A DNA stretch of 42,896 nt from Octopus bimaculoides (Eukaryota), in NCBI RefSeq assembly GCF_001194135.2, contig NC_068993.1, positions 21,548,196 to 21,591,091 on the forward strand. The letters are read 5' to 3'. This document shows, in pieces, positions 581-31,710 of the stretch (positions are counted from its first letter, which is position 1; each line of letters opens with the position of its first letter). The notes under the pieces are model-generated. The model saw nothing but the letters and a program-made list of their open reading frames with translations, made no database searches and was not told the origin of the DNA. A program made the position numbers and the translations under genes.

Positions 581-1244
581 TCAAAAAGAAAAGAAACTCG
601 CACAACACACTCTTCACGTCTGTACTCAATGGGTGACTATGTTCGAATGGCGCAACCTACAGGCAAGAAATTTTTGCGCATCTGGTTTTCACATGGTGGT
701 TTATTGCAGCCACTTTAAACTACGCAAGACCTATATGATTGATGACTACATCCCTATGATAAATCGTGTATGTGTGTGTGTTCATGTGTGTATGAAAGCA
801 CATACGTCAAATAATGAGATACACCAATGAAAATGCGTCTCCACCTGCGTTTCGTATCTTTTATGCTTTCCTTCTCAATCGCTGGCGTCAACTATCCCCT
901 CCCTATATCTCTTCCCTTATCTTTTAATCTATCTATATCTATATTTATTTAAGAGAATTATTTCTCTATGTCACCATATCGTAAGTCTTTCAGTTGCTCT
1001 CTAGAAGTAATTAATTGAAATATATATATAAGACAAAACTAATAATATCTTCAATGACACTGGAATATGCGACAGATGGTCAGATTTTTCTACAAGACTG
1101 AAGTACAACACACTGGAAATAATACGCATCGATATACAAATTTACATAAATACAAATATAAGGTAGCACATAATTTCGTTAACACTAAAAAAATATATGC
1201 ACGTTATTTCACGTCAATACTCTTTTCTTTTATACCGAGTTTCT

Positions 1245-1332: not shown

Positions 1333-2530
1333 CAGGGGTTGGACAAAATAATGGAAACATCTTAAAATTTCAAACAAATTTCAAACTTTCAAATTTATTT
1401 TAATATGGAGTAGGACCACCTTTGGCAGTAATTACAGCTTGAATTCTTGTGGTGATGATTGTGGAGGATATCGACTCCTTACATGCTTTTCTAAAACGCA
1501 CCATAAATGTTCAATAATATGAAGATCTGGCGTCTGTGGTGGCCAGATAAGATATTCAACTTCATTAGAATGTCCCTCGTGCCATTCAGCACAACTTTCG
1601 CTGTGGAAATTGGTACGTTATCATCCTGAAAGACTGCGTTTTCCTCCGGAAACAGTTCCGCAACCGTAGGATGAATTTGATCAAATAGAATGCTTAAATA
1701 GTCTTGACTGTTAATTCTGCCATGAAGGGAAATCATTGGGCCGGCGGATTTCCAAGATAAAGCCACCCTGCGTCCCAGATCATCACAGAACCTTCTTCAT
1801 GTTTAACAGTTGGAAAAAGGCAGTCTGCGTCAAATGCTTCTTATGGCTGTCTCCACACGTATACTCGGCCGGTGGTCGGAAATACGGTAAAGGATAACTC
1901 GTCTGAGAAAATAACATTCTTTGATTGCTCTAGGGACCAATTCTGTAAGTTTTTACTCCACTCTAAACACTTTGAAACGTTTGTCTTTGAAACTAGTGAA
2001 ACCATGAAATCCGGCTTTGTACAGCTCCTGGCGAACAATTTTTGCAGAAACTGGTTTCTCGAGGTGATCATTAAGCACTGCAGTGATTTTGAGAGCCGTA
2101 CTTTTGTGATCATTTCTAACAATTCGCGTAAGAGTCCGACAGTCACTATCTGAAAGTTTTGGTTTTCTTCCGATTTTTTTTTTTCGATGAGGAGGTTTTT
2201 CCCTCTTTCTTAAAGGCTATCATTACTTTCGAGACAGTACTTCTTGATACCCCAAACATTTCGGCTGTTTTCGATACGCTAGCAACTGCCATACGAGCAC
2301 CAACAATTTGAGCTCTTTGAAAGTCCGATAGATATGTGATTTTAATGAATTTCAATTACCGTTTTCTGTTGATATTTGAAACGAAACTGCAATTTTATCA
2401 AAACATATTAGCAGCACTAATAATAAATAAAAAAAAACATTAAAATAAACAAGCTTTTGACAGTTTTATAGATATTTCAAAATTATGATGCTATGATGCT
2501 TGGCGTTTCCGTTATTTTGTCCAACCCCTG
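1333..2530 (-). mobile_element. Tc1-like DNA transposon with both TIRs and a frameshifted transposase
   Basis: 26-bp TIRs CAGGGGTTGGACAAAATAATGGAAAC (1333-1358) and its reverse complement (2505-2530, 1 mismatch), TA on both sides. ORF pieces: HTH LSDFQRAQIVGARM..GVSRSTVSKV (2146-2355), VIFSDELSF..GRVYVWRQP (1841-2146), FQDDNVP (1491-1766). Confidence 0.93.
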
Positions 2531-2893: not shown

Positions 2894-3584
2894 GTAGCTT
2901 TCCACTTCCCCCTCCAACTCCTCCTCCAACTCCTCCTCCTCTTTCTTCTTCTTCTTCTTCCTTCATTTTCCGTCGTCCGATTCTTCTCTTTCGACTTCTA
3001 TTCCTTTTTCCCCCTTTCTCCTTCCTATCGTTATATATATCCACCTTCTAGATCCCCACCGCCACTGCCACAAAATTTCTTCCCCACAGACCCATCCTGC
3101 ATACACGCTTTTAATTTTTTTCCTTCTTATTATCTCCCGATACTTTCATCACAACAATATTTGAGAAACGGAGAATGTAACAGCATGCTTATCATGCCTA
3201 AAACCGTATGTTTCGTAATTTTTCTTTTAGAATCTTTGCGTAAACTGGAGATGGTACGGAAACATGTGCAACTTATAATCGAAAATGTGTTAAAAGTTTT
3301 TCTTTGTCTTCTTTTCATNNNNNNNNNNNNNNNNNNNNNNNNNNNNNNNNNNNNNNNNNNNNNNNNNNNNNNNNNNNNNNNNNNNNNNNNNNNNNNNNNN
3401 NNNNNNNNNNNNNNNNNNNNNNNNNNNNNNNNNNNNNNNNNNNNNNNNNNNNNNNNNNNNNNNNNNNNNNNNNNNNNNNNNNNNNNNNNNNNNNNNNNNN
3501 NNNNNNNNNNNNNNNNNNNNNNNNNNNNNNNNNNNNNNNNNNNNNNNNNNNNNNNNNNNNNNNNNNNNNNNNNNNNNNNNNNNN

Positions 3585-3623
<39 letters not shown>

Positions 3624-4088
3624 CATATATGCATGCATGTCTATATGTGTTCACGCGCGTGTGGGTTCGAATTGATGTGCGTACGTATGTATGTATGTTT
3701 CTGTTTATGTAGCAAATTAAAATCTGTTGGCGGCTGGAGAAATATTTATAATTAAAATTATTTACAGTTCCAGCCTCCTCGATCAACCGAGGAACTAATT
3801 TATGTTCGATTTTTCTTTATGAAATAATAAATACAGATTCATTAATGTCAACTGCTCAACGCTTAAACTAATCTTTGACAGCTTGATGACTCTTTAGCAA
3901 CACTAAAGAAATATAACCGAAAATCCAATCAAAGAATAGCTCCTTTCAATAATTGAGAATTCTTGTGCATTCCGCATTGATCTCTACACGATGTGGAATA
4001 AACTGCATTATGTTTTCATAATAAAATTTAAAAAAAAAACAATTTTCGTCACATGTTTCAAATAAAATTACTTATTTTTGTTATTCAG

Positions 4089-4136
4089 ACCGCAACAGCC
4101 TTTCTTGAGTAGACGGAAATTCAAACAAAATTCCAG
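4089..4136 (+). CDS. Candidate 48-nt exon, PQQPFLSRRKFKQNS
   Basis: tttttgttattcag| acceptor, CAG|gtgtga donor, open in phase 2-2. Confidence 0.35.
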
Positions 4137-4833
4137 GTGTGATCATATAGTGTCTGCTTCAGACATAATCCGTGCTGGATCGCGTCATGCAATGTGTTTC
4201 TTTTTAATATGGTTAGTCGCCCGGTAATGAAAAATACACACTTCATGACATAACTCCTTTTTTTTTTTCACCGGACAATAACCCTGCATTATCCCCTCTA
4301 AAGGAGTATAAAAGTAATTTTGGATCTATTAAAAAATTTTCGTAAGCATGGATATTAATCTTATGAAATTAAATCTCAACTAGCTGGAACCTTAGATATT
4401 TCGTGGAGCAGACAACCTCTGCTTCGTTCTTATATTTCATTCTTAAAACATATTTTCCACTGCTACGAAATACATTCCACTGAAAAGTATGTTTCAACGT
4501 AAAATTCTACAATACTTTGTAGTGTGTACATTATTATACGATGAATTAACAGTTGTGTATATTCGGAATGGATCAAAGTAACAATTGATTTATTAAATTA
4601 GAATTCTATAATTTGGTATGATTTTCTGTTTATATNNNNNNNNNNNNNNNNNNNNNNNNNNNNNNNNNNNNNNNNNNNNNNNNNNNNNNNNNNNNNNNNN
4701 NNNNNNNNNNNNNNNNNNNNNNNNNNNNNNNNNNNNNNNNNNNNNNNNNNNNNNNNNNNNNNNNNNNNNNNNNNNNNNNNNNNNNNNNNNNNNNNNNNNN
4801 NNNNNNNNNNNNNNNNNNNNNNNNNNNNNNNNN

Positions 4834-4866
<33 letters not shown>

Positions 4867-4929
4867 TAGTTTACACGATGTGTGGCGTTCAAATAAATAA
4901 TAACATAAATAATGTGTATATATATGCAT

Positions 4930-5450
4930 ATATAGGTACAGGACGTTACCAACTGTAAACAACATGAAGTACGAAAACACGCGAGTTAATTGCGCAAACA
5001 ACAAGAAAAGAAAATTAAAGACAGGACAAGTAGCACAAAGAACGACCCTTCATCAGTTGTCGGCTGTTTATCTATTCCTGATTTCGAGCATTCAACGACA
5101 ATATAAGACTTCGAAGACAGTTGCTCCCATAACTTCCAAAATGAATATTGGATTTTATGGAGAGTCAAAGTTGGGAATAAAAGCAGAACAGTGGAAACAA
5201 ACAAGGAAATCGAACGAAAATAAACATGGAGAGTCTTTAGACCAGAATGAGAGGAAAAATAATGAACGCAGGAAGAAATACTTTCTTTGAACAGAGAAAA
5301 GATAGAAGAGAGAGATAGAAACGTCCGGTCCTTCTTGCAAGATTGAAAGGGATGTTTGTTTTGGTGTGTCTTGGGTGGCATGAATTAAATAATAGATATT
5401 GTTTGGCATTTGTGGTTTAGTAAAATTCAAAATCAAATCTGATTTTACGT
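4930..5450 (-). mobile_element. Truncated Penelope-like element: RT thumb fragment plus 3' non-coding (pLTR-like) region
   Basis: 5413-5330 (-) translates TNAKQYLLFNSCHPRHTKTNIPFNLARR, the PLE RT C-terminal 'YL.F.SCHP.H....IP..LARR' motif. No GIY-YIG follows; instead non-coding sequence containing hammerhead core motifs. Confidence 0.8.
5040..5108 (-). ncRNA. Candidate hammerhead ribozyme with permuted strand order
   Basis: Minus strand: TCTTAT-A-TTGTCG-TT-GAATGCTC-GAAA-TCAGG-AATAGATAAACAGC-CGACAA-CTGATGA-A-GGGTCGTTC. Core motifs and three stems are present (see findings). Confidence 0.6.
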
Positions 5451-5700
5451 GTGCATTAAAAAACCTGATTTAATGTTATAAGATGCTCGGAATGCCACCA
5501 AAACTACATAGTGTCCACAGGATCATCACTCAAACGCAGATGCACTCGGCACCGACAACAGATTGCATTCTCATAACACAAAATGATACCCTTTAGTGAA
5601 CACATTGAGAGATGCGCAAACTAACTGCTACCACAATTTGTAATTTTTTCCATTTTATCAATGTGCCATTGGAACACCAACACGGGTTAGATTAAACAAA

Positions 5701-5820
5701 GAAACCTACCTCATTAAAAAAACATAAACCAAAACTTAACCATTTCTAACATTTTTAAGTAAGGAAACTTACCTCATTGAAAAAAATATAAAGCAAAACT
5801 TAACCACTTCTAACATTTTT
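5701..5820. repeat. Tandem duplication with ~63-bp period
   Basis: gaaacctacctcattaaaaaaacataaaccaaaacttaaccatttctaacattttt (5701-5756) recurs at 5764-5820 with several substitutions. Confidence 0.85.
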
Positions 5821-6552
5821 GTTCTATCAAAACCAAATCATGTTACATTAATAAAACCTAAACATTCCCAACGTTTTTGATTATCTCTCTTATACCGAAA
5901 ATATCCCTCATAACCTCCCCCAGTCTGAATCACTCCTACTTCACACCATAGCGAAGAGATGACACCATATCGGTAAGGAAATTTGAGAAATTTTAAAAGA
6001 AAATATGAAACCGGTTATTTCTCCAAAACTAATGTCACTACACACAAAATTATATAACATTTTTTCCAAAATGACGGTTTAATATATTCTTTAAGCATAT
6101 AACACAAGTCTTCTGTAGTTTNNNNNNNNNNNNNNNNNNNNNNNNNNNNNNNNNNNNNNNNNNNNNNNNNNNNNNNNNNNNNNNNNNNNNNNNNNNNNNN
6201 NNNNNNNNNNNNNNNNNNNNNNNNNNNNNNNNNNNNNNNNNNNNNNNNNNNNNNNNNNNNNNNNNNNNNNNNNNNNNNNNNNNNNNNNNNNNNNNNNNNN
6301 NNNNNNNNNNNNNNNNNNNNNNNNNNNNNNNNNNNNNNNNNNNNNNNNNNNNNNNNNNNNNNNNNNNNNNNNNNNNNNNNNNNNNNNNNNNNNNNNNNNN
6401 NNNNNNNNNNNNNNNNNNNNNNNNNNNNNNNNNNNNNNNNNNNNNNNNNNNNNNNNNNNNNNNNNNNNNNNNNNNNNNNNNNNNNNNNNNNNNNNNNNNN
6501 NNNNNNNNNNNNNNNNNNNNNNNNNNNNNNNNNNNNNNNNNNNNNNNNNNNN

Positions 6553-6587
<35 letters not shown>

Positions 6588-6589
6588 AT

Positions 6590-6820
6590 TCTTTTATTGT
6601 ATTATTTGTTTCAGTCATCTGACTGCGACCACGCTCGAGCACCGCCTGAAAGGTTTATTATCGAAGAAATCGATCCCAGGACTTATTCTTTGTAAGCCTG
6701 GTACTTATTCAGTTTGTCTCTTTTGCAGAACAGCTAAGATACGGGGACATAAAGAGACCAGCATCGCTTCTAAAGCGATGGCGGGGGTGCGTGGAGTAGA
6801 GATACACGAACACAGACACA
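6590..6820 (-). mobile_element. SINE family 1, 3' portion
   Basis: Reverse complement of the tail GGCGGTGCTCGAGCGTGGTCGCAGTCAGATGACTGAAACA; homologous to the copies at 6985-7340 and 9730-10037. Confidence 0.75.
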
Positions 6821-6984
6821 TGCACACACTTAAACATATACATATGTGTATACATATACAACAGTCTAGAAAAACAGGAGCACACTAACGATTCCCACAT
6901 GCAATAACCTAGTAACTGGACACCGGTTATGCTATGGTATATCCTTGAAGAAGTTTTAGGTAAATAAATCGGCTGTTGTACTTT

Positions 6985-7340
6985 TTCTTTAAGTCTGAAA
7001 CTTATATCGATCTATTTTGCCGAACGCTAAGGTACTGAGTCGTAAACACACAACACTGATTGTCAAGCGATGGTGGGGGCCAAACACAGACAGAAAGACA
7101 CATACACATACACACATATATACACACAAAACACAAACACTGACACAAGAACACAAACATACGTGCACACACATACATACATAAATACATACATAATACA
7201 TACATTACACACACACACAAACACACATATATATAATATGGGCTACTTTCAGTTTCTATCTACCAAATCTACTCACAAGACTTTGGTCGGTTATAGTAGA
7301 AGACACTTGTCGAAGGTGCTACATAGTTGGACTGAACCAG
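6985..7340 (-). mobile_element. SINE family 1 with internal (CA)-rich expansion
   Basis: ctaccaaatctactcacaagactttggtcgg..tagtagaagacacttgtc..ggactgaacc is antisense to the head of the 9730 copy. Confidence 0.75.
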
Positions 7341-7514
7341 TTTTCATACCAGTTTTCATACCAGACACACACGCATGCCCTTATATGTAAGTTAAAAATA
7401 CAAAACTTATCATTGTGAAAATCCTTTATCTTTTAAATAAAGTTTGCTACCCAATAAGTTTCTGAAAAAGTACGAATTGAACTGTCTGCAATAATTAAAC
7501 AATTCACATTTTAG

Positions 7515-7598
7515 AGTGACAATAGAAACACATACTTCTGGGAAGGGCAGAGATCAGAAGTTCCAATACAGCTGGAAGAATGTGAATGAATTCCAAAG
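7515..7598 (+). CDS. Candidate 84-nt exon, VTIETHTSGKGRDQKFQYSWKNVNEFQ
   Basis: cacattttag| acceptor, AAAG|gtaact donor, single open frame, phase 2-2, coding-like composition within AT-rich DNA. Confidence 0.55.
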
Positions 7599-8080
7599 GT
7601 AACTTTTCTCTTTTAAGATTGTTATATTGTGAAGCAAAGCATAACTATTCAGTAGCAATGTATAGATAACACTTTCGTTACCTTTCCCACTCTTTTTCTT
7701 TTTTTTTGTATACGACTTGATTTTGTGGTTAATAATATTTTATTTAATTATACAGAAAACACGGACAAGATGGAAAAACACATCGTTGAGCTTTCTGAAA
7801 ACTGCTGAAGGAATCAGAGAAGATAGTAAGCGACATATGCACATGAGAGAATATAAAATAAAGAGAAACAGCAGAATCATAAGTGGGGATCATATTTATA
7901 CGAAGTGGTTCATTATAAATTAATCGCATAATTTAAATGATTCAATAACAAACAGAGAAAATTCAAATAGTTAAAAAGGAAGGAAACTCACGATTTTCTA
8001 TCAAGAATCATTCGAAGAGACAGAAAACCAATATACACATACACATGCATAAATTAAAGTGCACCTACAAAATACGCACG

Positions 8081-8115
<35 letters not shown>

Positions 8116-8152
8116 NNNNNNNNNNNNNNNNNNNNNNNNNNNNNNNNNNNNN

Positions 8153-8209
<57 letters not shown>

Positions 8210-9376
8210 GACACACACACACACACTACAAATACTCAGACACACATAAATCTTCTGTAGGCAAACGTGCCAGTTAAGAACCTATCTTAACATACAAAAA
8301 GATGGAGGAAATCTAATTTTGAAGTACGTTTTGTAATATTTGAATTTAAATCTATGAAAATAGCATATGGAATAAAGATGAATAACAAGTGATAAAACAA
8401 GAATCATCCCATACAAGAGACTAGCCATCATATATACATATAGTCACACATAGGCGTGTACGTGCCTTTTTTGTGTGCCTGTGTATGTGTGTATGTTTGT
8501 GTGCGTGTGTGTATGTGTGCCTCTGTGTCTATGTGTGCGTGTACGTGTGGGTGTAAATCAGGAATAACTAATAGATTTTCACTTGCATATTAAGTGTATT
8601 TTAGGAATTTTACAACGAAGTTGTCATGTATCGCCTTTCTGAATACCTTCTTTCTTCTCTAGTCATTCCTTTTAATACGTGTCTCCACACACGTCATTTG
8701 ACTATATGTATGAACGCAGCATATATATATATATATATATGCAAACACACAAATGCACACATATGATCTATATGTGTGTGTATGAATATACATATATATG
8801 TATGCATATATATATATCTATATCTATCTATCTATCTATATATATGTATATATATATATATATATATATNNNNNNNNNNNNNNNNNNNNNNNNNNNNNNN
8901 NNNNNNNNNNNNNNNNNNNNNNATATATGTATATGTATATGTATATGTATGTATGTGTGAGTATACATATATTTAAATAGATAATTGTACACAAACACAA
9001 AAGCACATGCACACGCACGAACTTACACACGTATATGTATGCATCTACGTATGTACTACGTATATATTTTGATACGTATACATATGCTTGCACGTGTGTT
9101 TTGTGTATCTAGTAGTGAATTACTTCTTTGAAATTTCTATACATTATTCTTTGAGCGAAATGTTTCCTCAATTCACGGCACGCCTTGTAAGGCCGCTACA
9201 ACGCCTATCTTTGCATCACGCAAATTTGCAACATGAATCCATTGAAATTCTGAATATTATTGTCTTGAACCATAAAAAAATTTATTTTTAAAAGTTTGCA
9301 ATGTGGACTAAATATATTTTATGCTTTCCTAGCCAACAAGTATATTTCTAAAACATCTTCAAGTAATTTTTTTCAG

Positions 9377-10894: not shown

Positions 10895-11395
10895 CATAAA
10901 CTGAGAAAGGTATGGGGTTCAAAGTTAGCAAGGCTGGCAACAGTGGAGTTGTTCTTCAATAAGGGGCTGAAACATGGACGCTCACTAACGCATTGAAGAA
11001 ACAGTTGGACGGTTGTTATACGAAGATGCTTAGAATGAGACTCAATGTATTCTGGAAGAGTCATACAAGAAACGCCGACTACCAAAAGTAACATTGTGAC
11101 TACCAAATGTAACATTGAAGGTATAGCATGGAAGGATGAGACAGCTGGAAACTGCATCAGACACACCAATGAAATTGCTAACAAGCTAGTGCTCTGGCAA
11201 CCAACAGAACGAAGAACTAAGAGAGGAAGGACGAAGAGGACCTATATCGACAACTTGCTGGAGGGTACTGGTATGGAAGGAGTAGAAGAGCTGAAGGCCA
11301 TTATGGAAGATCAAGATGAATGGGGAAAACGTGTGGAAACAGTATTGGGGCGTCCTATGGGACGACCTAGATGAGATGATGGACAACAGTTTAAA
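10895..11395 (+). mobile_element. RTE-clade LINE 3' fragment
   Basis: ETWTLTNALKKQLDGCYTKMLRM, then AGNCIRHTNEIANKLVLWQP..RGRTKRTYIDNLLEGTG..MEDQDEW, typical of the RTE post-RT C-terminus; short gatga repeats at the 3' end. Confidence 0.85.
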
Positions 11396-13295: not shown

Positions 13296-15660
13296 CTAGC
13301 TGCAGTTCGAGAGCTGCGGCCATGCTGGGGTACCACCGTGAGTTTTGCTACCACTTTGAAACCTACCTGTGAGATGTAGCATTTGGTGAATGACGGAGTT
13401 TGATGTTGCTGTCCTCATATGCGCTTCTTGCCACAAGATAGTTTCATCCAGATCTCATGATAGGAGGGAATATAGTTTTGTTTTGAAAACACCTACATCC
13501 CCCCACTGTTGGTCTGTCAGGCATTTTAGATGGATATTGAAAAGCTATGAGCCCTTGAAACCCAAGTTGTTGCAATATCTGGTCCTGTATCCTGATAGCA
13601 ATGTTGAGATTGTTGGCACTGTTCTGTGTCGCACCGTTTGTGTAACTTTCAATGATGTAGTCTGGTAGAAGTCCTTCCAGGAGTTTCCAGATATCTATCA
13701 CTGCATATCTTTCCTACCTTTGTTCAAGGAAGTAGAGTCTTTACTTTTTTCGTCTTTCTCAGTAGCTGCCATGTAGCAATGAGACTATCATCTTTGTGTA
13801 GCTTCGCTGGATTGCCTCGAGTACCACCGTAAATTTTACATTGCATGGTGATCATAGTTTGGGGCAGTAGTTGAAACAGTTGAGGAATATGTCGTCCAGA
13901 AAAACATCATTGTTTTCTGCTATTTTGTTCTGAATGGTTTTTAGGATCTATCTGACTAACTGTCTGCATTTTATTGCCAAATCAGTAACATGCGTTCGGA
14001 AAGATACATCATTAGTCGTTTCAATGCTCAGGTCGCGCACTAATTGTGATTCAGAGATCACAATCCCTCTTAGGTCAGTGTATCTTGTCTGCTTTTCTTT
14101 CAGTTTTGCATGTTGGTAGTGTAGAGCTTGGAAATTTCCAGTATTAAACTGCATGTTATTGCCTTCAGTCCGCTTGAATATTGCGCCCACCACCTGTTGC
14201 AGCTGCGCAACTAACCCAGGGTTCTCTATCCTCAGGGAAACTTTTTTATCGTCTGCATTACTAGCAATGGTGGCTATATGGACAGCTGAGACACGGCTGA
14301 TAGTCACTATGAATTACAGCCTTAAGATAGCGCCCTATGGGTAACCATTCACTATTCATTTTTTGTGATACCTTGGAAGTTGGTTACTACTGCCTGATTT
14401 CTTGCTTTTAGAAAGTCGTATACCCACACTCCAAGTATCGCGACTATGCAAATATCACACCGCTCGTAGTATATCATACATTATTCTATTTTATCAAAGG
14501 CTTTAGCAAAGTTGAAATGTATCACACTCACTTTTGAATTGCTGAGTAGCAGCTTTAAAATGAAGTTGTAGTGCTGTAAGTGCTGCATTAGGCAGCTTGT
14601 ATCTGGTCAAAAACCATGCTGGGTGTCAGTCAGCATGTCATTCTCTTCAAGGAGCACAATTAGTTCAATCCTTTGAACTATTTGTTCCATGACCTTGCTG
14701 ATGTGTGAAGTCTTAGGGATAGGCTTATAACCTTTAGCATCAGCCCTGCTCTTCCTCCTTTATGGATAAGGCCTATTGTCCCCTTCTTACAATTTGCAAA
14801 GAATCCCTGGAAAAGAAGCTGCAGTGCTTTTGCAAGGGTCGTTCGCATGATTTAAGAAGGATTGGTAGGAATCCATCAGGACTAACAGCTAAGACTGCAT
14901 GTATCAAAATTGTGTCCTTCTTTTCTTTGATGTCGATGTAATCAATTGCTACTACCTCACATGTGTTGTGGTAAACAATTCTTCAGGTTTCCTGTCTTGC
15001 ATGTGCGGTCAGGTTGGTGTGAAATCATTTTTTAATTGTCCATTCAGTGTTTCACTTATCCTCATTGCGTTACCTGTGTGAGAACCACCATTTTGGAGAT
15101 GTGGCCCCAGCCTGCAACTCACAGAGGCCGTTTCTTTGGTATACGTAAAGAAAGATTTAATGTTTAATTGTATATTTTCCATAAACCAGGCTTCTTTTCT
15201 CCTTTTTCAGATTTTCTTTAATCTCCATCAGTGTAGTTTATAGGCGGACGGGATTTTTCACTGCTGTTGAGTTCCCTGTTTAGACAGATTGCAAATTTGA
15301 GCGCCGTCTCATGAAAAGTTTCCTCTCCTTGCGAATGTTGTCCTCATGTATAGCTGCCTTTTACTTTGAGACACTCTTCTAGCACATGGTGTGCATTACA
15401 AATATAAATTCTTTGAGTTTCATATCGATGCCAGGTGTAGATACATTGAGAGAAATCTCCTTTGATGATCTCTTTGGCAATCGATTTCCAGTCTGTTTTA
15501 TGGAGGTTAAGATAGGATAGACTTCGGGTGCTTTTTTTAGTCTGTATGTCTGGGGTTTCTTTGGTCCATACGCGGTCAGCTCTATCATATTGAAATCGTG
15601 TCCATTCTGTCGCTTCACAATATAACGTATAGTGTACGTGTATTTCTGCATCTGTGATGT
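13296..15660 (-). mobile_element. CR1-like LINE, 5'-truncated and degenerate ORF2
   Basis: Post-endonuclease region LSYLNLHKTDW; RT motifs KGGSRADAKGYKPIPKTSHISKVMEQIV, NFAKAFDK and SNADDKKVS..NNMQFNTGNFQAL; C-terminus DIWKLLEGLLP. Many stops and frameshifts; 3' tail at 13296-13340. Confidence 0.88.
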
Positions 15661-15879: not shown

Positions 15880-17391
15880 GATTAATGTACACAATCAATG
15901 CTAAACGGAGTAATTTTTATGTTAATGTCCATATATGTTTGGAGAATGGGGTATCATTGGTTGGTTGTAGCGTGTTTTTGATCTGGGTCACTTGAGATGC
16001 TAAGTATGTAGATATAGTAGTTGGTGTCGTCTCCGTGGTTACCGTTGTGCTACATATGATATTGCTTGAGAACCAAGTTCCTTCTATAGGGCACGATAAT
16101 GTTCTACAACTGCAATTTTTATGTTATATTGAGGTTTTCACTTTAAGACCACATTTGGTAATTGCAATTGTGTAAAAAAAAATTTGAAATTGTCGGTTGT
16201 GGAGTATGACAATTTTACGTTGTTTTTGTTTTTGTTTATTAGTTTGTAATACTTTTGGCTGGAATGGAAGTAATTTTGCCGCATTCTGAAAAATACTTTT
16301 GCTATTAGAGCCAAGACTAGTATGTTGAAGTGCAGATTAAACAAGATGATTTTGTTTTTCCTTTTTCTTGTGTAAAAATTTATTTGTTGTTTATATAGTT
16401 GTTGACGCCGTCATTGAGAACTTCAGTGTATGCAGTTGCTATTTTTTCATGCAAATGTAACATGTTTTTCATTTGAAGATGAAAAGGAAAGTCTAAGAGA
16501 AATGTTCTTTACAATGTTTGTAAAATTGATTTTTGAGTGGTTGGATTGATTATGAATACATTATGAATTTTTCGTTGCCTTTATTGTCGAGTCTGTAGAT
16601 ACTGGATTCTAGGCTAAGTGTATCTTCTAGGAAGTCGACTGACTTTAGTTGTGTTTCGACTGTAATAGAGAAGGTCAAGTTCTTAAACAAGTGACTTAAT
16701 TCTATTCTAAATTTATCAGATTTTTCCGAGTTATAGTTTCTTAGAAAGAGTATACCGTCATCCGTATACAGACCATCTGAGACGGATAAGCGTTGCCTAT
16801 TCTTTTGATCCTATGCGTATATCAAAAAGTTCTTTAATGGAAGAGAAGCTTTTTCCTTGCTTGTAATACTGTTTCTATATCGGTGAGCTTATTGTAGTTA
16901 TAGCTTTAGCGAAGTACAAATAAGCCATAAAGATAGGCTTTGTTTTTGACGCGTAATAATCTCGGATATCAAAGAAATGGCATTCATTTTTGTGTTGGAT
17001 CTTCTTAAACTAATCTATCATTTTGTATGTGTTACTCTAGATATAATGTTAATATCGCTTTCATTTTTGATGGGAATTTGTCAGTTTAAAAAAAAATTAA
17101 TAATGGTGCCCAGGCCTGGTTTTGAAGGATTTATAGGTCTGCTATTGTTTGGTTTGCTGTCTTTCATGGTCATATATGGGCATTTTGGTGTTAAGGTGTT
17201 AACACAATCCTTTATTATAAGTTTAGGGGTCTTATTTGTAGCTGTGGTATTTATATAAGTTAAAGCTGCATATGTTGATTCTTTGCTTGTGCGTTAGAGA
17301 CGGTGTTCGAAAGGAACCGGATATGTGTAGTTTCACTTATCTGGTGGAGGTTATTTGTGTTGTCCGATTTCACAAATATAGTTCGGCTTAT
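15880..17391 (-). mobile_element. Penelope-like element PLE1: RT and C-terminal GIY-YIG, degenerate
   Basis: IFVKSDNTNNL; MTMKDSKPN..RPINPSKPGLG; FFDIRDYYAS; ITVETQLKSVDFLEDTL; FNLHFNILVLALIAKVF..NVKLSYST; NCSCRTLSCPIEG..SSNII; TPFSKHIWTL. The order matches PLE RT-linker-GIY-YIG. Confidence 0.85.
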
Positions 17392-19442: not shown

Positions 19443-19664
19443 GAGGAAATATTCAGGAGTGAATATTTATATAGATATTTTATTGTTATTATTATCCTAT
19501 TATCCAGAGGCTGTCATATTTGTGGGTCCTTATGATATATATATATANNNNNNNNNNNNNNNNNNNNNNNNNNNNNNNNNNNNNNNNNNNNNNNNNNNNN
19601 NNNNNNNNNNNNNNNNNNNNNNNNNNNNNNNNNNNNNNNNNNNNATATATATACCCTTTTATTA

Positions 19665-20746: not shown

Positions 20747-21098
20747 NNNNNNNNNNNNNNNNNNNNNNNNNNNNNNNNNNNNNNNNNNNNNNNNNNNNNN
20801 NNNNNNNNNNNNNNNNNNNNNNNNNNNNNNNNNNNNNNNNNNNNNNNNNNNNNNNNNNNNNNNNNNNNNNNNNNNNNNNNNNNNNNNNNNNNNNNNNNNN
20901 NNNNNNNNNNNNNNNNNNNNNNNNNNNNNNNNNNNNNNNNNNNNNNNNNNNNNNNNNNNNNNNNNNNNNNNNNNTCTTATATATATATATATATATATAT
21001 ACATATATATAGATATATAGATATTTATGTATTTATGTATGCATAAGTAATTATTTGAATGAGGGAAGGAGAAATCAAATTTCATATAGCGTACCATA

Positions 21099-21774: not shown

Positions 21775-23345
21775 ACAAAGATTCTGTTTACGTTTCGGAC
21801 CTAGTGGGTATATATATTTCAAACAGGTTAACAATGAATTTTCCGGATATTACGGGCGGTCTACATCGGGAAGGCGCATTATCTATTTTCAGAAATCGCC
21901 GTAAATCTATACTTGAAAGAATAAGTTAAACTTATATCATTTCTTATTAGATATGCGGTTATTGATTTCTCTCAAAAAGGAACATAAGATAGTAAGTTTT
22001 CTTGTCGTGACACTTCAACTTAATATGGGTCTATATAAACCGTATCACGAGCCAAATGAGAACCTACATTACGCAAAGATAAATTCTAACTATCCAAGCC
22101 AATACTCTATAGTTAACAGTGTATCATTCAAGATCTCTAAATAATCAGCAAATGAGGAGATTTTTCAACTAGAATGCTAAATATTATAACAGTGCTCTTA
22201 GAAATATTGGATACTAAGAAACTATTGAATATACACCGGACGCAACGAACCTGACCTGACTAGATGTAGAATTACTGTGGGATATTTAAGCTCTAAAGGT
22301 AGAGGCTACAATCCCACTACACAGCCTAGCATTAATGTCATTCATAACCACCTTGTGAATGGATGTTACCCTTCAAGTCTACACTACTGAAGGAACGTAG
22401 GTTTCAACCTTACACGCATCTCCCTCCTGCTATAGATAAAGTGGACGAGACTATGTTTATAACTAAAGAATATTGAATGTATAGATTTGATATTTATTGC
22501 CCCATGTGCAGTAAATGTCAAATCTCACCCAAGAAATTTTCTTGGAAATAATTTGGTAAATCAGAGTTTTCAGAATGATTGTCCAGGTTCGATATACCTA
22601 TCATTATAAGTATATCGAAGCGGGAAGGCACTTATAACATAGCTTGTGAAAGGAATAAGTTGCTGAGGACTTAAGTCAATCTAGTTCTGTTTGTCGCCTC
22701 CCCAATGGTTGGATTACTCAATCAGTAGGTTACTAACGGCGACGAAGATGCACACATTACTACCACATTACATAATAGCCATTGCTTTCTTAAGAATAGA
22801 TATGATAGTAATAACAGTAATTTCAGCTGCGATGAGAATGTACGGAGTAACGAATTAACTAGCCAAGATATTCGTGTTAAGTATGATAACCCATCTCCTC
22901 GTATTGACAATTGCATAGGTCCTGAGAGAAGGATAGAATTATGTTTACTTACAGAAGACCGGCTGAGTATCTCCTACAAAATAGATGCCTCATAAATAAT
23001 GTTGTTTACAAATGTTGTTTCCTTATATCTGGAAAAACATATAATTAGATTGCTGCGACTTCAAATAAATGTAAGATCTGATTACGAAAGCATTATATAA
23101 TTTTAGGAATGAAAGCTAGGATAATTTCACTTCATTATCGAAGCTAATATGGGAGCTTAAACAGAACGGCAAGAACTACTCAAGCTGTTTGTCTATTATC
23201 AAATGCGCTACGGCTTACACAGGCGGTGGAGGATATTGTGTGCTCTACTGTAGCAATGCGCTCCCTATTATGAACTTCAAAGACATCTTGATAAATAAAT
23301 TCCACGAAGTTATTGTGAGGTGATCACATCTTAGAACGTTCCTTT
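21775..23345 (+). mobile_element. Penelope-like element PLE2, 5'-truncated: RT C-terminal half, linker and GIY-YIG, degenerate
   Basis: SDLVGIYIF; KIVSFLVVTLQLNMGLYKPYHEPNENLHY; YYNSALRNIGY; RRPAEYLLQNRCLINNVVYKC; TSLSKLIWELKQNG; AYTGGGGYCVL; LINKFHEVIVR. Confidence 0.85.
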
Positions 23346-25012: not shown

Positions 25013-25622
25013 CGTTTAATGAGATATAGAATAAAAATATTGTCAGTTTAAAGGGACAATTTTAACGTCAATTTCACTTGCCGACACCACATTTAAATTA
25101 TGTCTTTTATCATTCACTCTGCTGCGATGTTTTGTAAGCCTGTTGTATCTTAACTTGGTGAGGTATAGTACTCCCGTTTATATCATTCGAAGTCTTACAA
25201 GTCTCTTTTTGAACAGGAATACTATGCTTGCCAAGATACGGCATGATGTGCTTATGAAGTTATAGCCAGGGCTATAATTATCTCCTCAATGTATATATAT
25301 TGGAGTAAATTTACAATACTACAATGGCAATGAAAACAAGATATATAATGATATCCAAGTATATATATATATATATATATNNNNNNNNNNNNNNNNNNNN
25401 NNNNNNNNNNNNNNNNNNNNNNNNNNNNNNNNNNNNNNNNNNNNNNNNNNNNNNNNNNNNNNNNNNNNNNNNNNNNNNNNNNNNNNNNNNNNNNNNNNNN
25501 NNNNNNNNNNNNNNNNNNNNNNNNNNNNNNNNNNNNNNNNNNNNNNNNNNNNNNNNNNNNNNNNNNNNNNNNNNNNNNNNNNNNNNNNNNNNNNNNNNNN
25601 NNNNNNNNNNTATATATATATG

Positions 25623-26161: not shown

Positions 26162-26334
26162 CTTACATACATATATATGTGTCTGTATGTATGCATATAT
26201 NNNNNNNNNNNNNNNNNNNNNNNNNNNNNNNNNNNNNNNNNNNNNNNNNNNNNNNNNNNNNNNNNNNNNNNNNNNNNNNNNNNNNNNNNNNNNNNNNNNN
26301 NNNNNNNNNNNNNNNNNNNNNNNNNNNNNNNNNN

Positions 26335-27983: not shown

Positions 27984-28759
27984 NNNNNNNNNNNNNNNNN
28001 NNNNNNNNNNNNNNNNNNNNNNNNNNNNNNNNNNNNNNNNNNNNNNNNNNNNNNNNNNNNNNNNNNNNNNNNNNNNNNNNNNNNNNNNNNNNNNNNNNNN
28101 NNNNNNNNNNNNNNNNNNNNNNNNNNNNNNNNNNNNNNNNNNNNNNNNNNNNNNNNNNNNNNNNNNNNNNNNNNNNNNNNNNNNNNNNNNNNNNNNNNNN
28201 NNNNNNNNNNNNNNNNNNNNNNNNNNNNNNNNNNNNNNNNNNNNNNNNNNNNNNNNNNNNNNNNNNNNNNNNNNNNNNNNNNNNNNNNNNNNNNNNNNNN
28301 NNNNNNNNNNNNNNNNNNNNNNNNNNNNNNNNNNNNNNNNNNNNNNNNNNNNNNNNNNNNNNNNNNNNNNNNNNNNNNNNNNNNNNNNNNNNNNNNNNNN
28401 NNNNNNNNNNNNNNNNNNNNNNNNNNNNNNNNNNNNNNNNNNNNNNNNNNNNNNNNNNNNNNNNNNNNNNNNNNNNNNNNNNNNNNNNNNNNNNNNNNNN
28501 NNNNNNNNNNNNNNNNNNNNNNNNNNNNNNNNNNNNNNNNNNNNNNNNNNNNNNNNNNNNNNNNNNNNNNNNNNNNNNNNNNNNNNNNNNNNNNNNNNNN
28601 NNNNNNNNNNNNNNNNNNNNNNNNNNNNNNNNNNNNNNNNNNNNNNNNNNNNNNNNNNNNNNNNNNNNNNNNNNNNNNNNNNNNNNNNNNNNNNNNNNNN
28701 NNNNNNNNNNNNNNNNNNNNNNNNNNNNNNNNNNNNNNNNNNNNNNNNNNNNNNNNNNN
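27984..28759. other. Largest assembly gap. Others: 3319-3584, 4636-4833, 6122-6552, 8116-8152, 8870-8922, 19548-19644, 20747-20974, 25381-25610, 26201-26334, 31236-31661
   Basis: N-runs, mostly bordered by (TA)n or (CA)n; adjacency across gaps is not guaranteed. Confidence 1.
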
Positions 28760-30134: not shown

Positions 30135-31710
30135 TAGAAGCTAGTGTATATTTCTTGTAAATTTTATGCATTCTGAAACTAAATATCTGATATGAACGCA
30201 GTCTACGTTGAGGGAAACGTAAATACTGAGGAGTCAGATGAAACCTTTATTAACAAGCAATTACAAACACAAACATAGACATTCATTCACAAAAATCTCG
30301 TACATACATATGATATATATATATATATATACAAATATATATGTGTGAGTGTCCATATATATATATCGTGTGTGTATGTGTGATGAGAAGAAGACAGAGA
30401 AAATGATTTAACACGTCTTTAATGTTTCGCTACAACTGTTTCTGTACCAACTCTGTTCGCAACGGAAGTTACACAAAAATTCGATGATAAAATTTACGCA
30501 ATGTTTGCGGTTTTAGACATTAGAGAGGCACTTTATCAGACTTGCGTCAAAGGTGTGCTATTGCATTGTGCCTCTTCCAGACCTTGTTATATTATTCAGC
30601 CCGACTTCGAAATGTATTTGGTTACATGAAATGCTAACAGAGTTCGAAGTGTATACCATCAACAAAATATAAAAGTCAGTATGAATAGAATTAAAATAGA
30701 TATTACAATTAGCTTAACATTATACTGAGTCACTGCAAAGAATATTTAGCAACGATATCTATCTAAATTATTTATATAGATATGATAGATAGAAAAATAG
30801 ATAGATAGATAGACAGGCATATACATATATAACAGTGTACATGCAACACATACATTCGTATAGATTTGCATTTGTGTATGTATATGAGTATGAATTTGTC
30901 TTTGCACATGTGACTGACCATTTAAGAAAAATCCTCGAGCTCACCTATAATTAAATACATACGCATACGTTCATGTATATGCACGAGCGTTTCCATATTT
31001 ACTGTCGACAATTGTCAGCAACTGGTCTGACTCACATCCGTCTATATTTATACAGAACAATGTTCACATAAAGTTTTATTTCTAAAAAAGACAAAATCAG
31101 AAGTCACTAGACCTAACATCAACGACTCCAATAACGCCTACTCAGCAATATAGGTTACAACTCTCTCTCCCACTCTTCCACAAAACTTACACACACGCAC
31201 GCACACAAACACACACACACACACACACACACACANNNNNNNNNNNNNNNNNNNNNNNNNNNNNNNNNNNNNNNNNNNNNNNNNNNNNNNNNNNNNNNNN
31301 NNNNNNNNNNNNNNNNNNNNNNNNNNNNNNNNNNNNNNNNNNNNNNNNNNNNNNNNNNNNNNNNNNNNNNNNNNNNNNNNNNNNNNNNNNNNNNNNNNNN
31401 NNNNNNNNNNNNNNNNNNNNNNNNNNNNNNNNNNNNNNNNNNNNNNNNNNNNNNNNNNNNNNNNNNNNNNNNNNNNNNNNNNNNNNNNNNNNNNNNNNNN
31501 NNNNNNNNNNNNNNNNNNNNNNNNNNNNNNNNNNNNNNNNNNNNNNNNNNNNNNNNNNNNNNNNNNNNNNNNNNNNNNNNNNNNNNNNNNNNNNNNNNNN
31601 NNNNNNNNNNNNNNNNNNNNNNNNNNNNNNNNNNNNNNNNNNNNNNNNNNNNNNNNNNNNNTTTTGGATTTTGTCCCTAATATTATTATATATATATATA
31701 TATGTATATG

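What the first reader, a model, noticed from the sequence alone, without database searches (positions are those of the whole stretch)
5040..5108. Hammerhead ribozyme candidate with reversed strand order (triple-crossing pseudoknot) in a Penelope-like element
Seen, minus strand 5'->3': TCTTAT-A | TTGTCG | TT | GAATGCTC-GAAA-TCAGG | 14-nt linker | CGACAA-CTGATGA-A-GGGTCGTTC. Stem I, TTGTCG/CGACAA, is a perfect 6 bp abutting both the UA cleavage site and CUGAUGA. Stem II, GGG(T)CGTTC/GAATGCTC, has 8 pairs (2 G-U, 1 bulge) and abuts GAAA. Stem III, ATCAGG/TCTTAT, has 5 of 6 pairs (1 G-U, one C-U mismatch), including A15.1-U16.1. Established: the core is CUGANGA/GAAA/NUH; an extra A after A9 is tolerated (CChMVd plus-strand hammerhead); PLE pseudo-LTRs carry hammerheads. 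This motif is sense to, and downstream of, a PLE RT fragment. Types I-III all keep the cyclic order CUGA-strand, GAAA-strand, UH-strand; here it is reversed (helices 1-4, 2-5, 3-6). Inference: the 2-nt link would join the distal ends of stems I and II, which lie side by side in folded hammerheads, so the fold is sterically plausible. Standard type I-III descriptors would miss it. I know of no description of this topology but cannot search. Trans or multimer assembly is an alternative.
Basis: partly seen in the sequence, partly recalled or inferred. Interest (0 to 1): 0.88.

Follow-up and report, generated by a model that had tools for sequence, protein, structure and literature searches.

The report
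Lone match to known permuted hammerhead
The bases are exactly as described, but this "reversed" hammerhead layout was already published in 2023 as the type-SGC hammerhead ribozyme, and this single, weakly paired copy lies outside any Penelope-like element and is most likely a chance match.

Summary
It has CUGAUGA, GAAA and a UA site, with three mutually crossing stems.

The topology is not new. It is the S-G-C block order of the type-SGC hammerhead (Eckert et al., NAR 2023, PMC10085705). That type was validated by cleavage assays, compensatory mutants and covariation. The candidate also shares its 2-3 nt link between stems I and II and its extra base after A9.

Nothing beyond the pattern supports function:
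- It is a single copy in the window, and I could retrieve no homologues.
- Stem III is unstable as a duplex (+0.4 kcal/mol).
- The fourth helix that type-SGC needs for cleavage is at chance level.
- The region folds less stably than its shuffles.

The chance rate is about 1.2% per window for any block order. For the SGC layout it is 1.7e-4 from shuffles, and real DNA gave 4-20 times more hits than shuffles.

The motif is not in a Penelope-like element (PLE). PLE-like coding fragments lie only at 19834-16055 (-) and 21780-23341 (+), so the nearest ends 10.9 kb away. Intact relatives of that PLE carry canonical type I hammerheads about 160-190 bp from their ORF.

Verdict: probably a chance match (0.85). 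A genuine animal-genome type-SGC ribozyme has a probability of about 0.04.

The parts
5103..5108 (-). Block S: 3' strand of proposed stem III, UCUUAU (16.6-16.1)
   Evidence: Read directly. It pairs with 5082-5077 in 5 of 6 positions. The isolated duplex is +0.4 kcal/mol.
5102..5102 (-). Block S: H17 = A. The predicted scissile bond is between 5102 and 5101.
   Evidence: Position follows by analogy with the hammerhead numbering. Not tested.
5096..5101 (-). Block S: 3' strand of stem I, UUGUCG (1.1-1.6)
   Evidence: Perfect 6-bp complement of 5062-5057. Duplex -5.5 kcal/mol.
5094..5095 (-). 2-nt link (UU) from stem I to stem II
   Evidence: Validated type-SGC ribozymes have 2-3 nt here.
5086..5093 (-). 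Block G: 3' strand of stem II, GAAUGCUC
   Evidence: 8 pairs with 5048-5040, including one bulged U and two G-U. Duplex -5.2 kcal/mol.
5082..5085 (-). Block G: GAAA (G12 A13 A14 A15.1)
5077..5082 (-). Block G: 5' strand of stem III, AUCAGG (15.1-15.6)
5063..5076 (-). 14-nt G-to-C linker. Bases 5072-5063 could form the 5' strand of a fourth helix.
   Evidence: Best duplex with the 3' tail is AGC/GCU plus GAUAA/UUGUC around a 2x2 internal loop, -5.5 kcal/mol. 500 of 2000 composition-matched shuffles do as well.
5057..5062 (-). Block C: 5' strand of stem I, CGACAA (2.6-2.1)
5050..5056 (-). Block C: CUGAUGA (C3-A9)
5049..5049 (-). Extra A between A9 and G10.1
   Evidence: SGC-1, SGC-2 and SGC-3 have an extra U at this place (oligo sequences). 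PLE minimal hammerheads also have an unpaired base here.
5040..5048 (-). Block C: 5' strand of stem II, GGGUCGUUC
5025..5034 (-). Possible 3' strand of a fourth helix (GCU..UUGUC), 5 nt beyond stem II
   Evidence: Not better than chance (25% of shuffles).

Best explanation
This is a chance match. A stretch of unique, pyrimidine-rich, apparently non-coding DNA in a repeat-rich draft animal-type genome happens to satisfy the loose consensus of a hammerhead in the S-G-C block order. It has no biological role. If transcribed, it would mostly adopt competing nested hairpins that tie up the GAAA and the cleavage-site strand, and it would not cleave efficiently.
For: - Single copy: a self-comparison of 4834-6121 against the window gives only microsatellite matches and a local 64-bp duplication.
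- No relatives: the ORF spanning the motif has no Pfam hit and no homologue among 5.8 billion proteins. The exact core string is absent from viral contigs. Three exact-product look-ups found no contig.
- Chance rates: 1.25% per window for any block order. For the SGC layout the rate is 1.7e-4 per window in shuffles. Real DNA gave 4-20 times more hits than shuffles. That implies a few dozen such matches per gigabase.
- Helix-II-like pairings of 7-9 pairs next to a core and a GAAA occur six more times in this window.
- Weak structure: stem III is +0.4 kcal/mol as a duplex, against -3.5 to -7.1 in validated SGC-1, -2 and -3.
- The fourth helix, which mutagenesis shows is needed for type-SGC cleavage, is matched by 25% of shuffles.
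- The 96-nt region has an MFE of -15.1 kcal/mol, weaker than its shuffles (z = +1.29). That MFE structure contains none of the three stems.
- No supporting context: the motif is not within or beside a PLE. No hairpin or other ribozyme hit on either strand. Relatives of the window's PLE use canonical type I hammerheads.
- Known type-SGC ribozymes come only from environmental RNA.
Against: - It has the S-G-C order, a 2-nt I-II link, an extra base after A9, and a G-to-C spacer of permitted length.
- On my crude pair count it scores 20. Four genuine type-SGC ribozymes score 19-20.
- Only 2 of 12000 shuffled windows reached that score in this layout.
- A single pattern-found sequence without covariation (GCS-1) did cleave in vitro in Eckert et al., so pattern matches can be active.
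Confidence: 0.85

Rival explanations
1. It is a genuine, DNA-encoded type-SGC hammerhead ribozyme. The transcript folds into the triple-crossing S-G-C arrangement, with stems II and III stacked and stem I held beside stem II by the UU link, possibly helped by the weak fourth helix. It then self-cleaves 3' of A5102 by the usual hammerhead in-line transesterification.
For: - All core bases are present. All three stems abut the core.
- The 2-nt link and the extra base after A9 match validated type-SGC ribozymes.
- The pair count equals that of true examples.
- The shuffle rate in this layout is 1.7e-4 per window.
- A fourth helix can be drawn at the right place.
Against: - No covariation is obtainable. 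Single copy, no relatives.
- Stem III is unstable and mismatched at its third pair.
- The fourth helix is at chance level.
- No structural energy signal.
- Every known type-SGC ribozyme is in environmental RNA with a hairpin ribozyme on the other strand. No such partner is seen here.
- Eckert et al. searched RefSeq 85 with type-SGC patterns. The supplement lists 'RNA' as the molecule for the type-SGC variants, and its Note 1 says all their data on the rearranged hammerheads came from assembled metatranscriptomes.
- The false-positive rate in real DNA is 4-20 times the shuffle estimate.
Confidence: 0.04
2. It is a decayed relic of a hammerhead once carried by a mobile element, either a PLE or retrozyme family or a rearranged minimal PLE hammerhead. 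It is now inactive. The G-U pairs and the C-U mismatch would be mutational decay.
For: - The block CUGAUGA, one unpaired base, then an 8-pair helix II resembles the PLE minimal hammerhead described in PMC4209133: helix II of 7-8 bp with an unpaired base at its 5' end.
- The window contains two decayed PLE-like copies.
- Three G-U pairs could be deaminated G-C pairs (inference).
Against: - S-G-C is not a circular permutation of C-G-S, so no tandem junction or simple duplication of a canonical PLE hammerhead produces it (reasoning from block order).
- Reading the G block's own UC as the site gives no helix I (sequence).
- The flanks have no similarity to PLE loci or to any other part of the window.
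- Hammerheads of the related PLEs have a different core and arms, GCAC-CUGAAGA...GAAAC...GUC|GUGC.
Confidence: 0.06
3. It is active only by assembly of two or more transcripts, as a dimer or in trans. That would relieve the pseudoknot topology, as in the double hammerheads of PLEs and some viroids.
For: Weak stem III is typical of hammerheads that act as dimers.
Against: - In a dimer of two identical S-G-C molecules the S-to-G link of 2 nt is kept, so the topology is not relieved unless three molecules take part (reasoning).
- There is no tandem or nearby second copy.
- Stem III here is not palindromic.
Confidence: 0.01

Closest known systems
Type-SGC hammerhead ribozyme (HRIMA-1 motif and type-SGC variants; Eckert, Friedrich, Weinberg and Weinberg, Nucleic Acids Res 2023, PMC10085705)
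   Same: - Block order: site, then GAAA, then CUGAnGA.
- Three mutually crossing stems.
- Stem I joined to stem II by 2-3 nt (2 nt here).
- One extra base after A9 (U in SGC-1, -2 and -3; A here).
- Stem I of 5-6 bp.
- A spacer between the G and C blocks within the published 0-44 nt range.
- The same predicted cleavage site.
   Different: - Known examples (583 sequences) come from soil, spruce and freshwater metatranscriptome RNA, usually with a hairpin ribozyme on the other strand. They show covariation in all stems.
- They have a 6-8 bp fourth helix shown by mutagenesis to be required.
- The candidate is a lone DNA locus in an animal-type genome.
- It does not share HRIMA-1's invariant stem I (AUGUU/AACAU).
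- It has a mismatched, unstable stem III and only a chance-level fourth helix.
Minimal type I hammerheads of Penelope-like elements (Cervera and de la Pena, Mol Biol Evol 2014, PMC4209133)
   Same: CUGAnGA is followed by one unpaired base and a long helix II (7-8 bp). Helix III is weak.
   Different: - PLE hammerheads are in canonical C-G-S order, sit in the flanking repeats next to the RT-endonuclease ORF, are multicopy, and act as dimers.
- In relatives of this window's PLE they read GGCAC-CUGAAGA-U-CGCCU-CCA-AGGCG-U-GAAAC-UACUA-GUC|GUGC, about 160-190 bp from the ORF ends.
- The candidate is S-G-C, 10.9 kb from the nearest PLE-like coding match, and single copy.
GCS-1, the single type-GCS hammerhead candidate of Caballeronia peredens (same paper)
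   Same: A lone pattern match to a non-circular hammerhead permutation with no covariation support.
   Different: GCS-1 has uninterrupted stems and was shown to cleave in vitro (about 0.014 per min). Even so, its authors consider its biological relevance unclear. The candidate is untested and has weaker stems.

Membership tests
Type-SGC hammerhead ribozyme | 5'-to-3' block order S (cleavage site), G (GAAA), C (CUGAnGA) | tested here: met
   Order read directly. My scanner labels it UGC (S-G-C).
Type-SGC hammerhead ribozyme | All conserved core bases: CUGAnGA, GAAA, A15.1-U16.1, and H (not G) at position 17 | tested here: met
   CUGAUGA 5056-5050, GAAA 5085-5082, A5082-U5103, A5102.
Type-SGC hammerhead ribozyme | Stems I, II and III directly adjoining the blocks, with at most 1-2 inserted bases | tested here: inconclusive
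   Stems I and II are present (-5.5 and -5.2 kcal/mol) with one inserted A. Stem III has only two pairs before a C-U mismatch and is +0.4 kcal/mol as a duplex. Validated examples are -3.5 to -7.1.
Type-SGC hammerhead ribozyme | Short linker (typically 3 nt) from the 3' strand of stem I to the 3' strand of stem II | tested here: met
   UU, 5095-5094. Published description.
Type-SGC hammerhead ribozyme | Fourth helix joining the other sides of stems I and II, required for cleavage (M8/M9 mutants) | tested here: inconclusive
   5072-5063 with 5034-5025: 8 pairs around a 2x2 loop, -5.5 kcal/mol. 25% of composition-matched shuffles do as well. Requirement described.
Type-SGC hammerhead ribozyme | Covariation in the stems across homologues | not testable with these tools
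   No homologous copy found in the window, protein databases, viral contigs or by exact-product look-ups. The collections hold no searchable eukaryotic genomes at DNA level.
Type-SGC hammerhead ribozyme | Site-specific self-cleavage abolished by the G5 mutation | not testable with these tools
   Needs a bench experiment.
Type-SGC hammerhead ribozyme | Usual context: environmental RNA with a hairpin ribozyme on the opposite strand | tested here: not met
   The window is repeat-rich genomic DNA with transposon fragments, microsatellites and N gaps. No Rfam ribozyme hit on either strand. This context is typical rather than strictly defining.
Penelope-like-element hammerhead (minimal type I) | Canonical C-G-S order with helix II closed by a loop | tested here: not met
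   The GAAA block is upstream of CUGAUGA. There is no GAAA in the ~150 nt read downstream of CUGAUGA (5049-4900).
Penelope-like-element hammerhead (minimal type I) | Location in the terminal repeats flanking the RT / GIY-YIG ORF | tested here: not met
   PLE-like coding matches lie only at 19834-16055 (-) and 21780-23341 (+). Relatives have their hammerheads about 160-190 bp from the ORF ends.
Penelope-like-element hammerhead (minimal type I) | Long helix II (7-8 bp) with an unpaired base at its 5' end | tested here: met
   A5049 followed by 8 pairs.
Classical hammerheads, types I-III (Rfam models) | Match to an Rfam hammerhead covariance model | tested here: not met
   No hit at gathering score in the window, and none at E<=10 in 3500-7500. 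Control: Rfam 15 also misses a true type-SGC ribozyme in L133 and the true PLE hammerheads in L135-L141. This negative therefore says little.

The most novel reading that the evidence does not exclude
The motif is the first DNA-encoded type-SGC (non-circularly permuted) hammerhead ribozyme in an animal-type genome. It would be either a single-copy cellular ribozyme or the visible member of an unrecognised repeat family. That would take this permutation beyond the environmental viroid-like RNAs where it is so far known.
Probability: 0.04. Interest if true: 0.65.

Novelty: not a real feature. Interest (0 to 1): 0.25.

Why it matters
If it were real, it would show that the pseudoknotted S-G-C hammerhead permutation also exists in cellular eukaryotic DNA. 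So far it is known only from environmental RNA, probably viroid-like replicons. It would also suggest that standard type I-III descriptors undercount genomic hammerheads.

As the evidence stands, the value is mostly cautionary:
- The topology is already published.
- Loose hammerhead descriptors that allow any block order hit about 1% of 43-kb windows by chance.
- Dinucleotide shuffles underestimate the false-positive rate in real DNA several-fold.

One practical by-product: Rfam 15 detects neither true type-SGC ribozymes nor the minimal PLE hammerheads found here. A negative Rfam scan therefore cannot be used against such candidates.

Tried and rejected
- Rfam scans of the window gave no ribozyme hit. 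I later showed this is uninformative for this class.
- Looking for a second copy in the window found none.
- Looking for relatives through proteins found nothing. The spanning ORF has no homologues. Exact-product look-ups of three window ORFs found no contig.
- A DNA pattern scan with the candidate's core gave 0 hits in viral contigs.
- Collecting true type-SGC ribozymes for a covariance model failed. A 15-mer gave only chance phage hits. A gapped HRIMA-1 pattern gave 0 hits in viral contigs and 16 in metagenomes, of which only L133 is a real type-SGC ribozyme. The published alignments are held as images only. With four sequences from a different lineage a model would test only homology to HRIMA-1, which the different stem I already excludes, so I built none.
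- A type II (G-S-C) minimal hammerhead reading, using the G block's own UC site, was rejected. AGGAAU... cannot pair with ...GACAA, so there is no helix I.
- A tandem-junction origin from a canonical PLE hammerhead was rejected, because S-G-C is not a circular permutation of C-G-S.
- Confirming the RT fragment with Pfam and the word-indexed protein search failed. The exhaustive HMMER search succeeded.
- Two other weak pattern hits in the window, near 30226 (+) and 27527 (-), were looked at and judged to be chance.

Full report
**1. The observation**

On the minus strand the window reads, from 5108 to 5040, UCUUAU-A|UUGUCG-UU-GAAUGCUC-GAAA-UCAGG-AAUAGAUAAACAGC-CGACAA-CUGAUGA-A-GGGUCGUUC.
- Stem I (5101-5096 with 5062-5057) is a perfect 6 bp.
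- Stem II (5048-5040 with 5093-5086) has 8 pairs, one bulged U and two G-U.
- Stem III (5082-5077 with 5108-5103) has 5 of 6 pairs with a C-U mismatch at the third position.
- The three helices cross one another pairwise.

**2. The topology is already known**

- They divide the hammerhead into blocks S (site), G (GAAA) and C (CUGAnGA).
- Types I, II and III are CGS, GSC and SCG.
- They describe a fourth natural order, type SGC, which is the order seen here.
- It comprises 583 sequences with covariation in all stems.
- Cleavage occurs at the predicted site, is lost in a core G mutant, and is lost and then restored by disruptive and compensatory mutations in each of four helices.

I rebuilt SGC-1, SGC-2 and SGC-3 from the oligonucleotides in their supplement. 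All three have a 2-3 nt link and an extra U between A9 and G10.1. Each also has a 6-8 bp fourth helix, formed between the spacer before the 5' strand of stem I and the tail after the 5' strand of stem II.

No later paper in the library reports this type in animal genomes or PLEs.

**3. Fit to type SGC**

Layout: S, 2 nt, G, 14 nt, C, with an extra A after A9. All of this is within the published pattern.

On my pair-counting scanner the candidate scores 20. SGC-1 scores 20, and SGC-2, SGC-3 and a genuine metagenomic example (L133, Ga0265779_101469) score 19.

The weak points are these.
- Stem III is +0.4 kcal/mol as a duplex, against -3.5 to -7.1 for the validated ribozymes.
- The best fourth helix is 5072-5063 with 5034-5025, at -5.5 kcal/mol. 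It is equalled by 25% of composition-matched shuffles.
- The 96-nt region folds to -15.1 kcal/mol, worse than its shuffles (z = +1.29). That nested structure sequesters the GAAA and the site strand.

**4. Chance**

- CTGATGA occurs 4 times in the window, with 6.1 expected.
- Any-order descriptor: 1.25% of 1200 shuffled windows reach 20 pairs.
- SGC layout with a link of 5 nt or less: 2 of 12000 shuffled windows reach 20 pairs, 0.04% reach 19, and 0.33% meet a basic descriptor.
- Calibration on 1.24 Mb of unrelated real DNA gave 4 lax and 2 basic hits, against 1.03 and 0.083 in shuffles of the same DNA. Shuffles therefore understate the rate 4-20 fold.
- A realistic rate is about 1e-3 per window. 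That means a few dozen equally good matches per gigabase.
- Helix-II-like pairings of 7-9 pairs next to a core and a GAAA occur six more times in this window alone.

**5. Context: not in a PLE**

- The three minus-strand frames of 4870-8115 show nothing RT-like.
- The ORF at 16553-16810 (-) has 253 relatives in an exhaustive HMMER search.
- Long relatives have the RT motifs followed by a C-terminal GIY-YIG-like segment. Their precomputed Pfam hits are PF26215, PF28514 and PF01541.
- tblastn places PLE-like coding fragments only at 19834-16055 (-) and 21780-23341 (+).
- The nearest fragment ends 10.9 kb upstream of the motif. Between them I read a LINE-like RT fragment at about 13.4-15.2 kb, but Pfam did not confirm it.
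- BLASTN of 4870-5700 against 12 PLE loci finds nothing.

I fetched intact relatives (L134-L145).
- They carry canonical type I minimal hammerheads in direct repeats on both sides of the ORF, about 160-190 bp from its ends. They read GGCAC-CUGAAGA-U-CGCCU-CCA-AGGCG-U-GAAAC-UACUA-GUC|GUGC.
- The Solemya velum locus has three copies of a version with a 9-bp helix II.
- No S-G-C match, even at the laxest threshold, occurs in these 85.6 kb.
- No hammerhead remains beside the window's own decayed PLE fragments.

**6. Other searches**

- There is no second copy of the region in the window.
- The spanning ORF has no homologues.
- The candidate's core string is absent from viral contigs.
- Rfam finds nothing. 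However, Rfam 15 also misses the true type-SGC ribozyme in L133 and the true PLE hammerheads, so that negative carries no weight.

**7. Conclusion**

The sequence observation is correct. The fold it suggests is a legitimate, published hammerhead permutation. What is missing is any sign that this instance is more than a pattern match.
- There is no conservation, no copy number and no element context.
- Stem III is unstable, and the fourth helix required in the validated ribozymes is at chance level.
- All known type-SGC ribozymes are in environmental RNA.
- A RefSeq-wide descriptor search by the discoverers reported the type-SGC ribozymes only from RNA.

I put 0.85 on chance, 0.06 on a decayed mobile-element relic, 0.04 on a functional type-SGC ribozyme and 0.01 on trans or multimer assembly.

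Detectable cleavage in vitro is a separate and somewhat likelier matter, roughly 10-20% by my judgement. Sequences that satisfy the consensus can cleave whatever their origin, as GCS-1 did.

Noticed in passing
window 19834-16055 (-) and 21780-23341 (+): Two decayed Penelope-like-element copies lie head to head. tblastn with full-length relatives matches about residues 56-595 on the minus strand and about 323-712, including the GIY-YIG-like end, on the plus strand. Both are interrupted by stops and frameshifts. No hammerhead survives beside either.
   Followed up: yes
L136-L145 (e.g. L137 388 and 2890; L138 100 and 2603); L135 35690, 39206, 44518 (+), 36698 (-): Intact relatives of that PLE carry canonical type I minimal hammerheads in direct repeats on both sides of the ORF: GGCAC-CUGAAGA-U-CGCCU-CCA-AGGCG-U-GAAAC-UACUA-GUC|GUGC. 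The Solemya velum locus has three copies with a 9-bp helix II. Rfam 15 at gathering score detects none of them.
   Followed up: yes
L133 about 722-800 (-), contig Ga0265779_101469: A genuine type-SGC (HRIMA-1-like) hammerhead was found in a JGI contig by pattern search. Rfam 15 gives no match to it even at E<=1, so the current Rfam release has no model that detects this class.
   Followed up: partly
window about 13400-15200 (-): Reading frames with non-LTR (LINE-like) reverse-transcriptase motifs: YKPIPKTSHISKVMEQ, FAKAFDKIE, NADD. This rests on my reading of the translations only. Pfam gave no hit on the pieces tried.
   Followed up: partly
window 11039-11371 (+): An ORF ending ...WQPTERRTKRGRTKRTYIDNLLEGTGM...MEDQDEWGKRV resembles, from memory, the C-terminal tail of RTE-type LINE proteins. 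Pfam gave no hit.
   Followed up: no
window 1494-2216 (-): ORFs with Tc1/mariner-like transposase motifs (FQDDNVPISTAKVV; RKPKLSDSDCRTLTRIV). This rests on my reading only. Pfam gave no hit.
   Followed up: no
window 3319-3584, 4636-4833, 6122-6552, 8116-8152, 8870-8922, 19548-19644, 20747-20974, 25381-25610, 26201-26334, 27984-28759, 31236-31661: Eleven runs of N, nearly all flanked by (TA)n, (CA)n or similar microsatellites. This is a draft assembly with gaps at simple repeats. The weak Rfam microRNA matches at 3580-3700 are such repeats.
   Followed up: no
window 4913-5384, both strands: Long ORFs overlap on opposite strands (125 aa on plus, 132 aa on minus) in roughly 30% G+C DNA. The minus strand here is strongly pyrimidine-rich, which removes stop codons. 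Neither ORF has homologues.
   Followed up: partly
window 5692-5820: A local tandem duplication of a unit of about 64 bp (84-93% identity), 0.6 kb from the motif and unrelated to it.
   Followed up: no
window about 30147-30250 (+) and 27527-27470 (-): Two further weak hammerhead-like pattern hits. One is in type III order with a 3-pair stem III. The other is a type I minimal pattern whose helix I comes from a CA repeat. Both are judged to be chance.
   Followed up: partly
1.24 Mb of fetched loci (L001-L145 except L133): Methodological point: real DNA gave 4-20 times more S-G-C descriptor hits than dinucleotide shuffles of the same DNA. Shuffle-based expectations for RNA motif descriptors are therefore optimistic.
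   Followed up: yes
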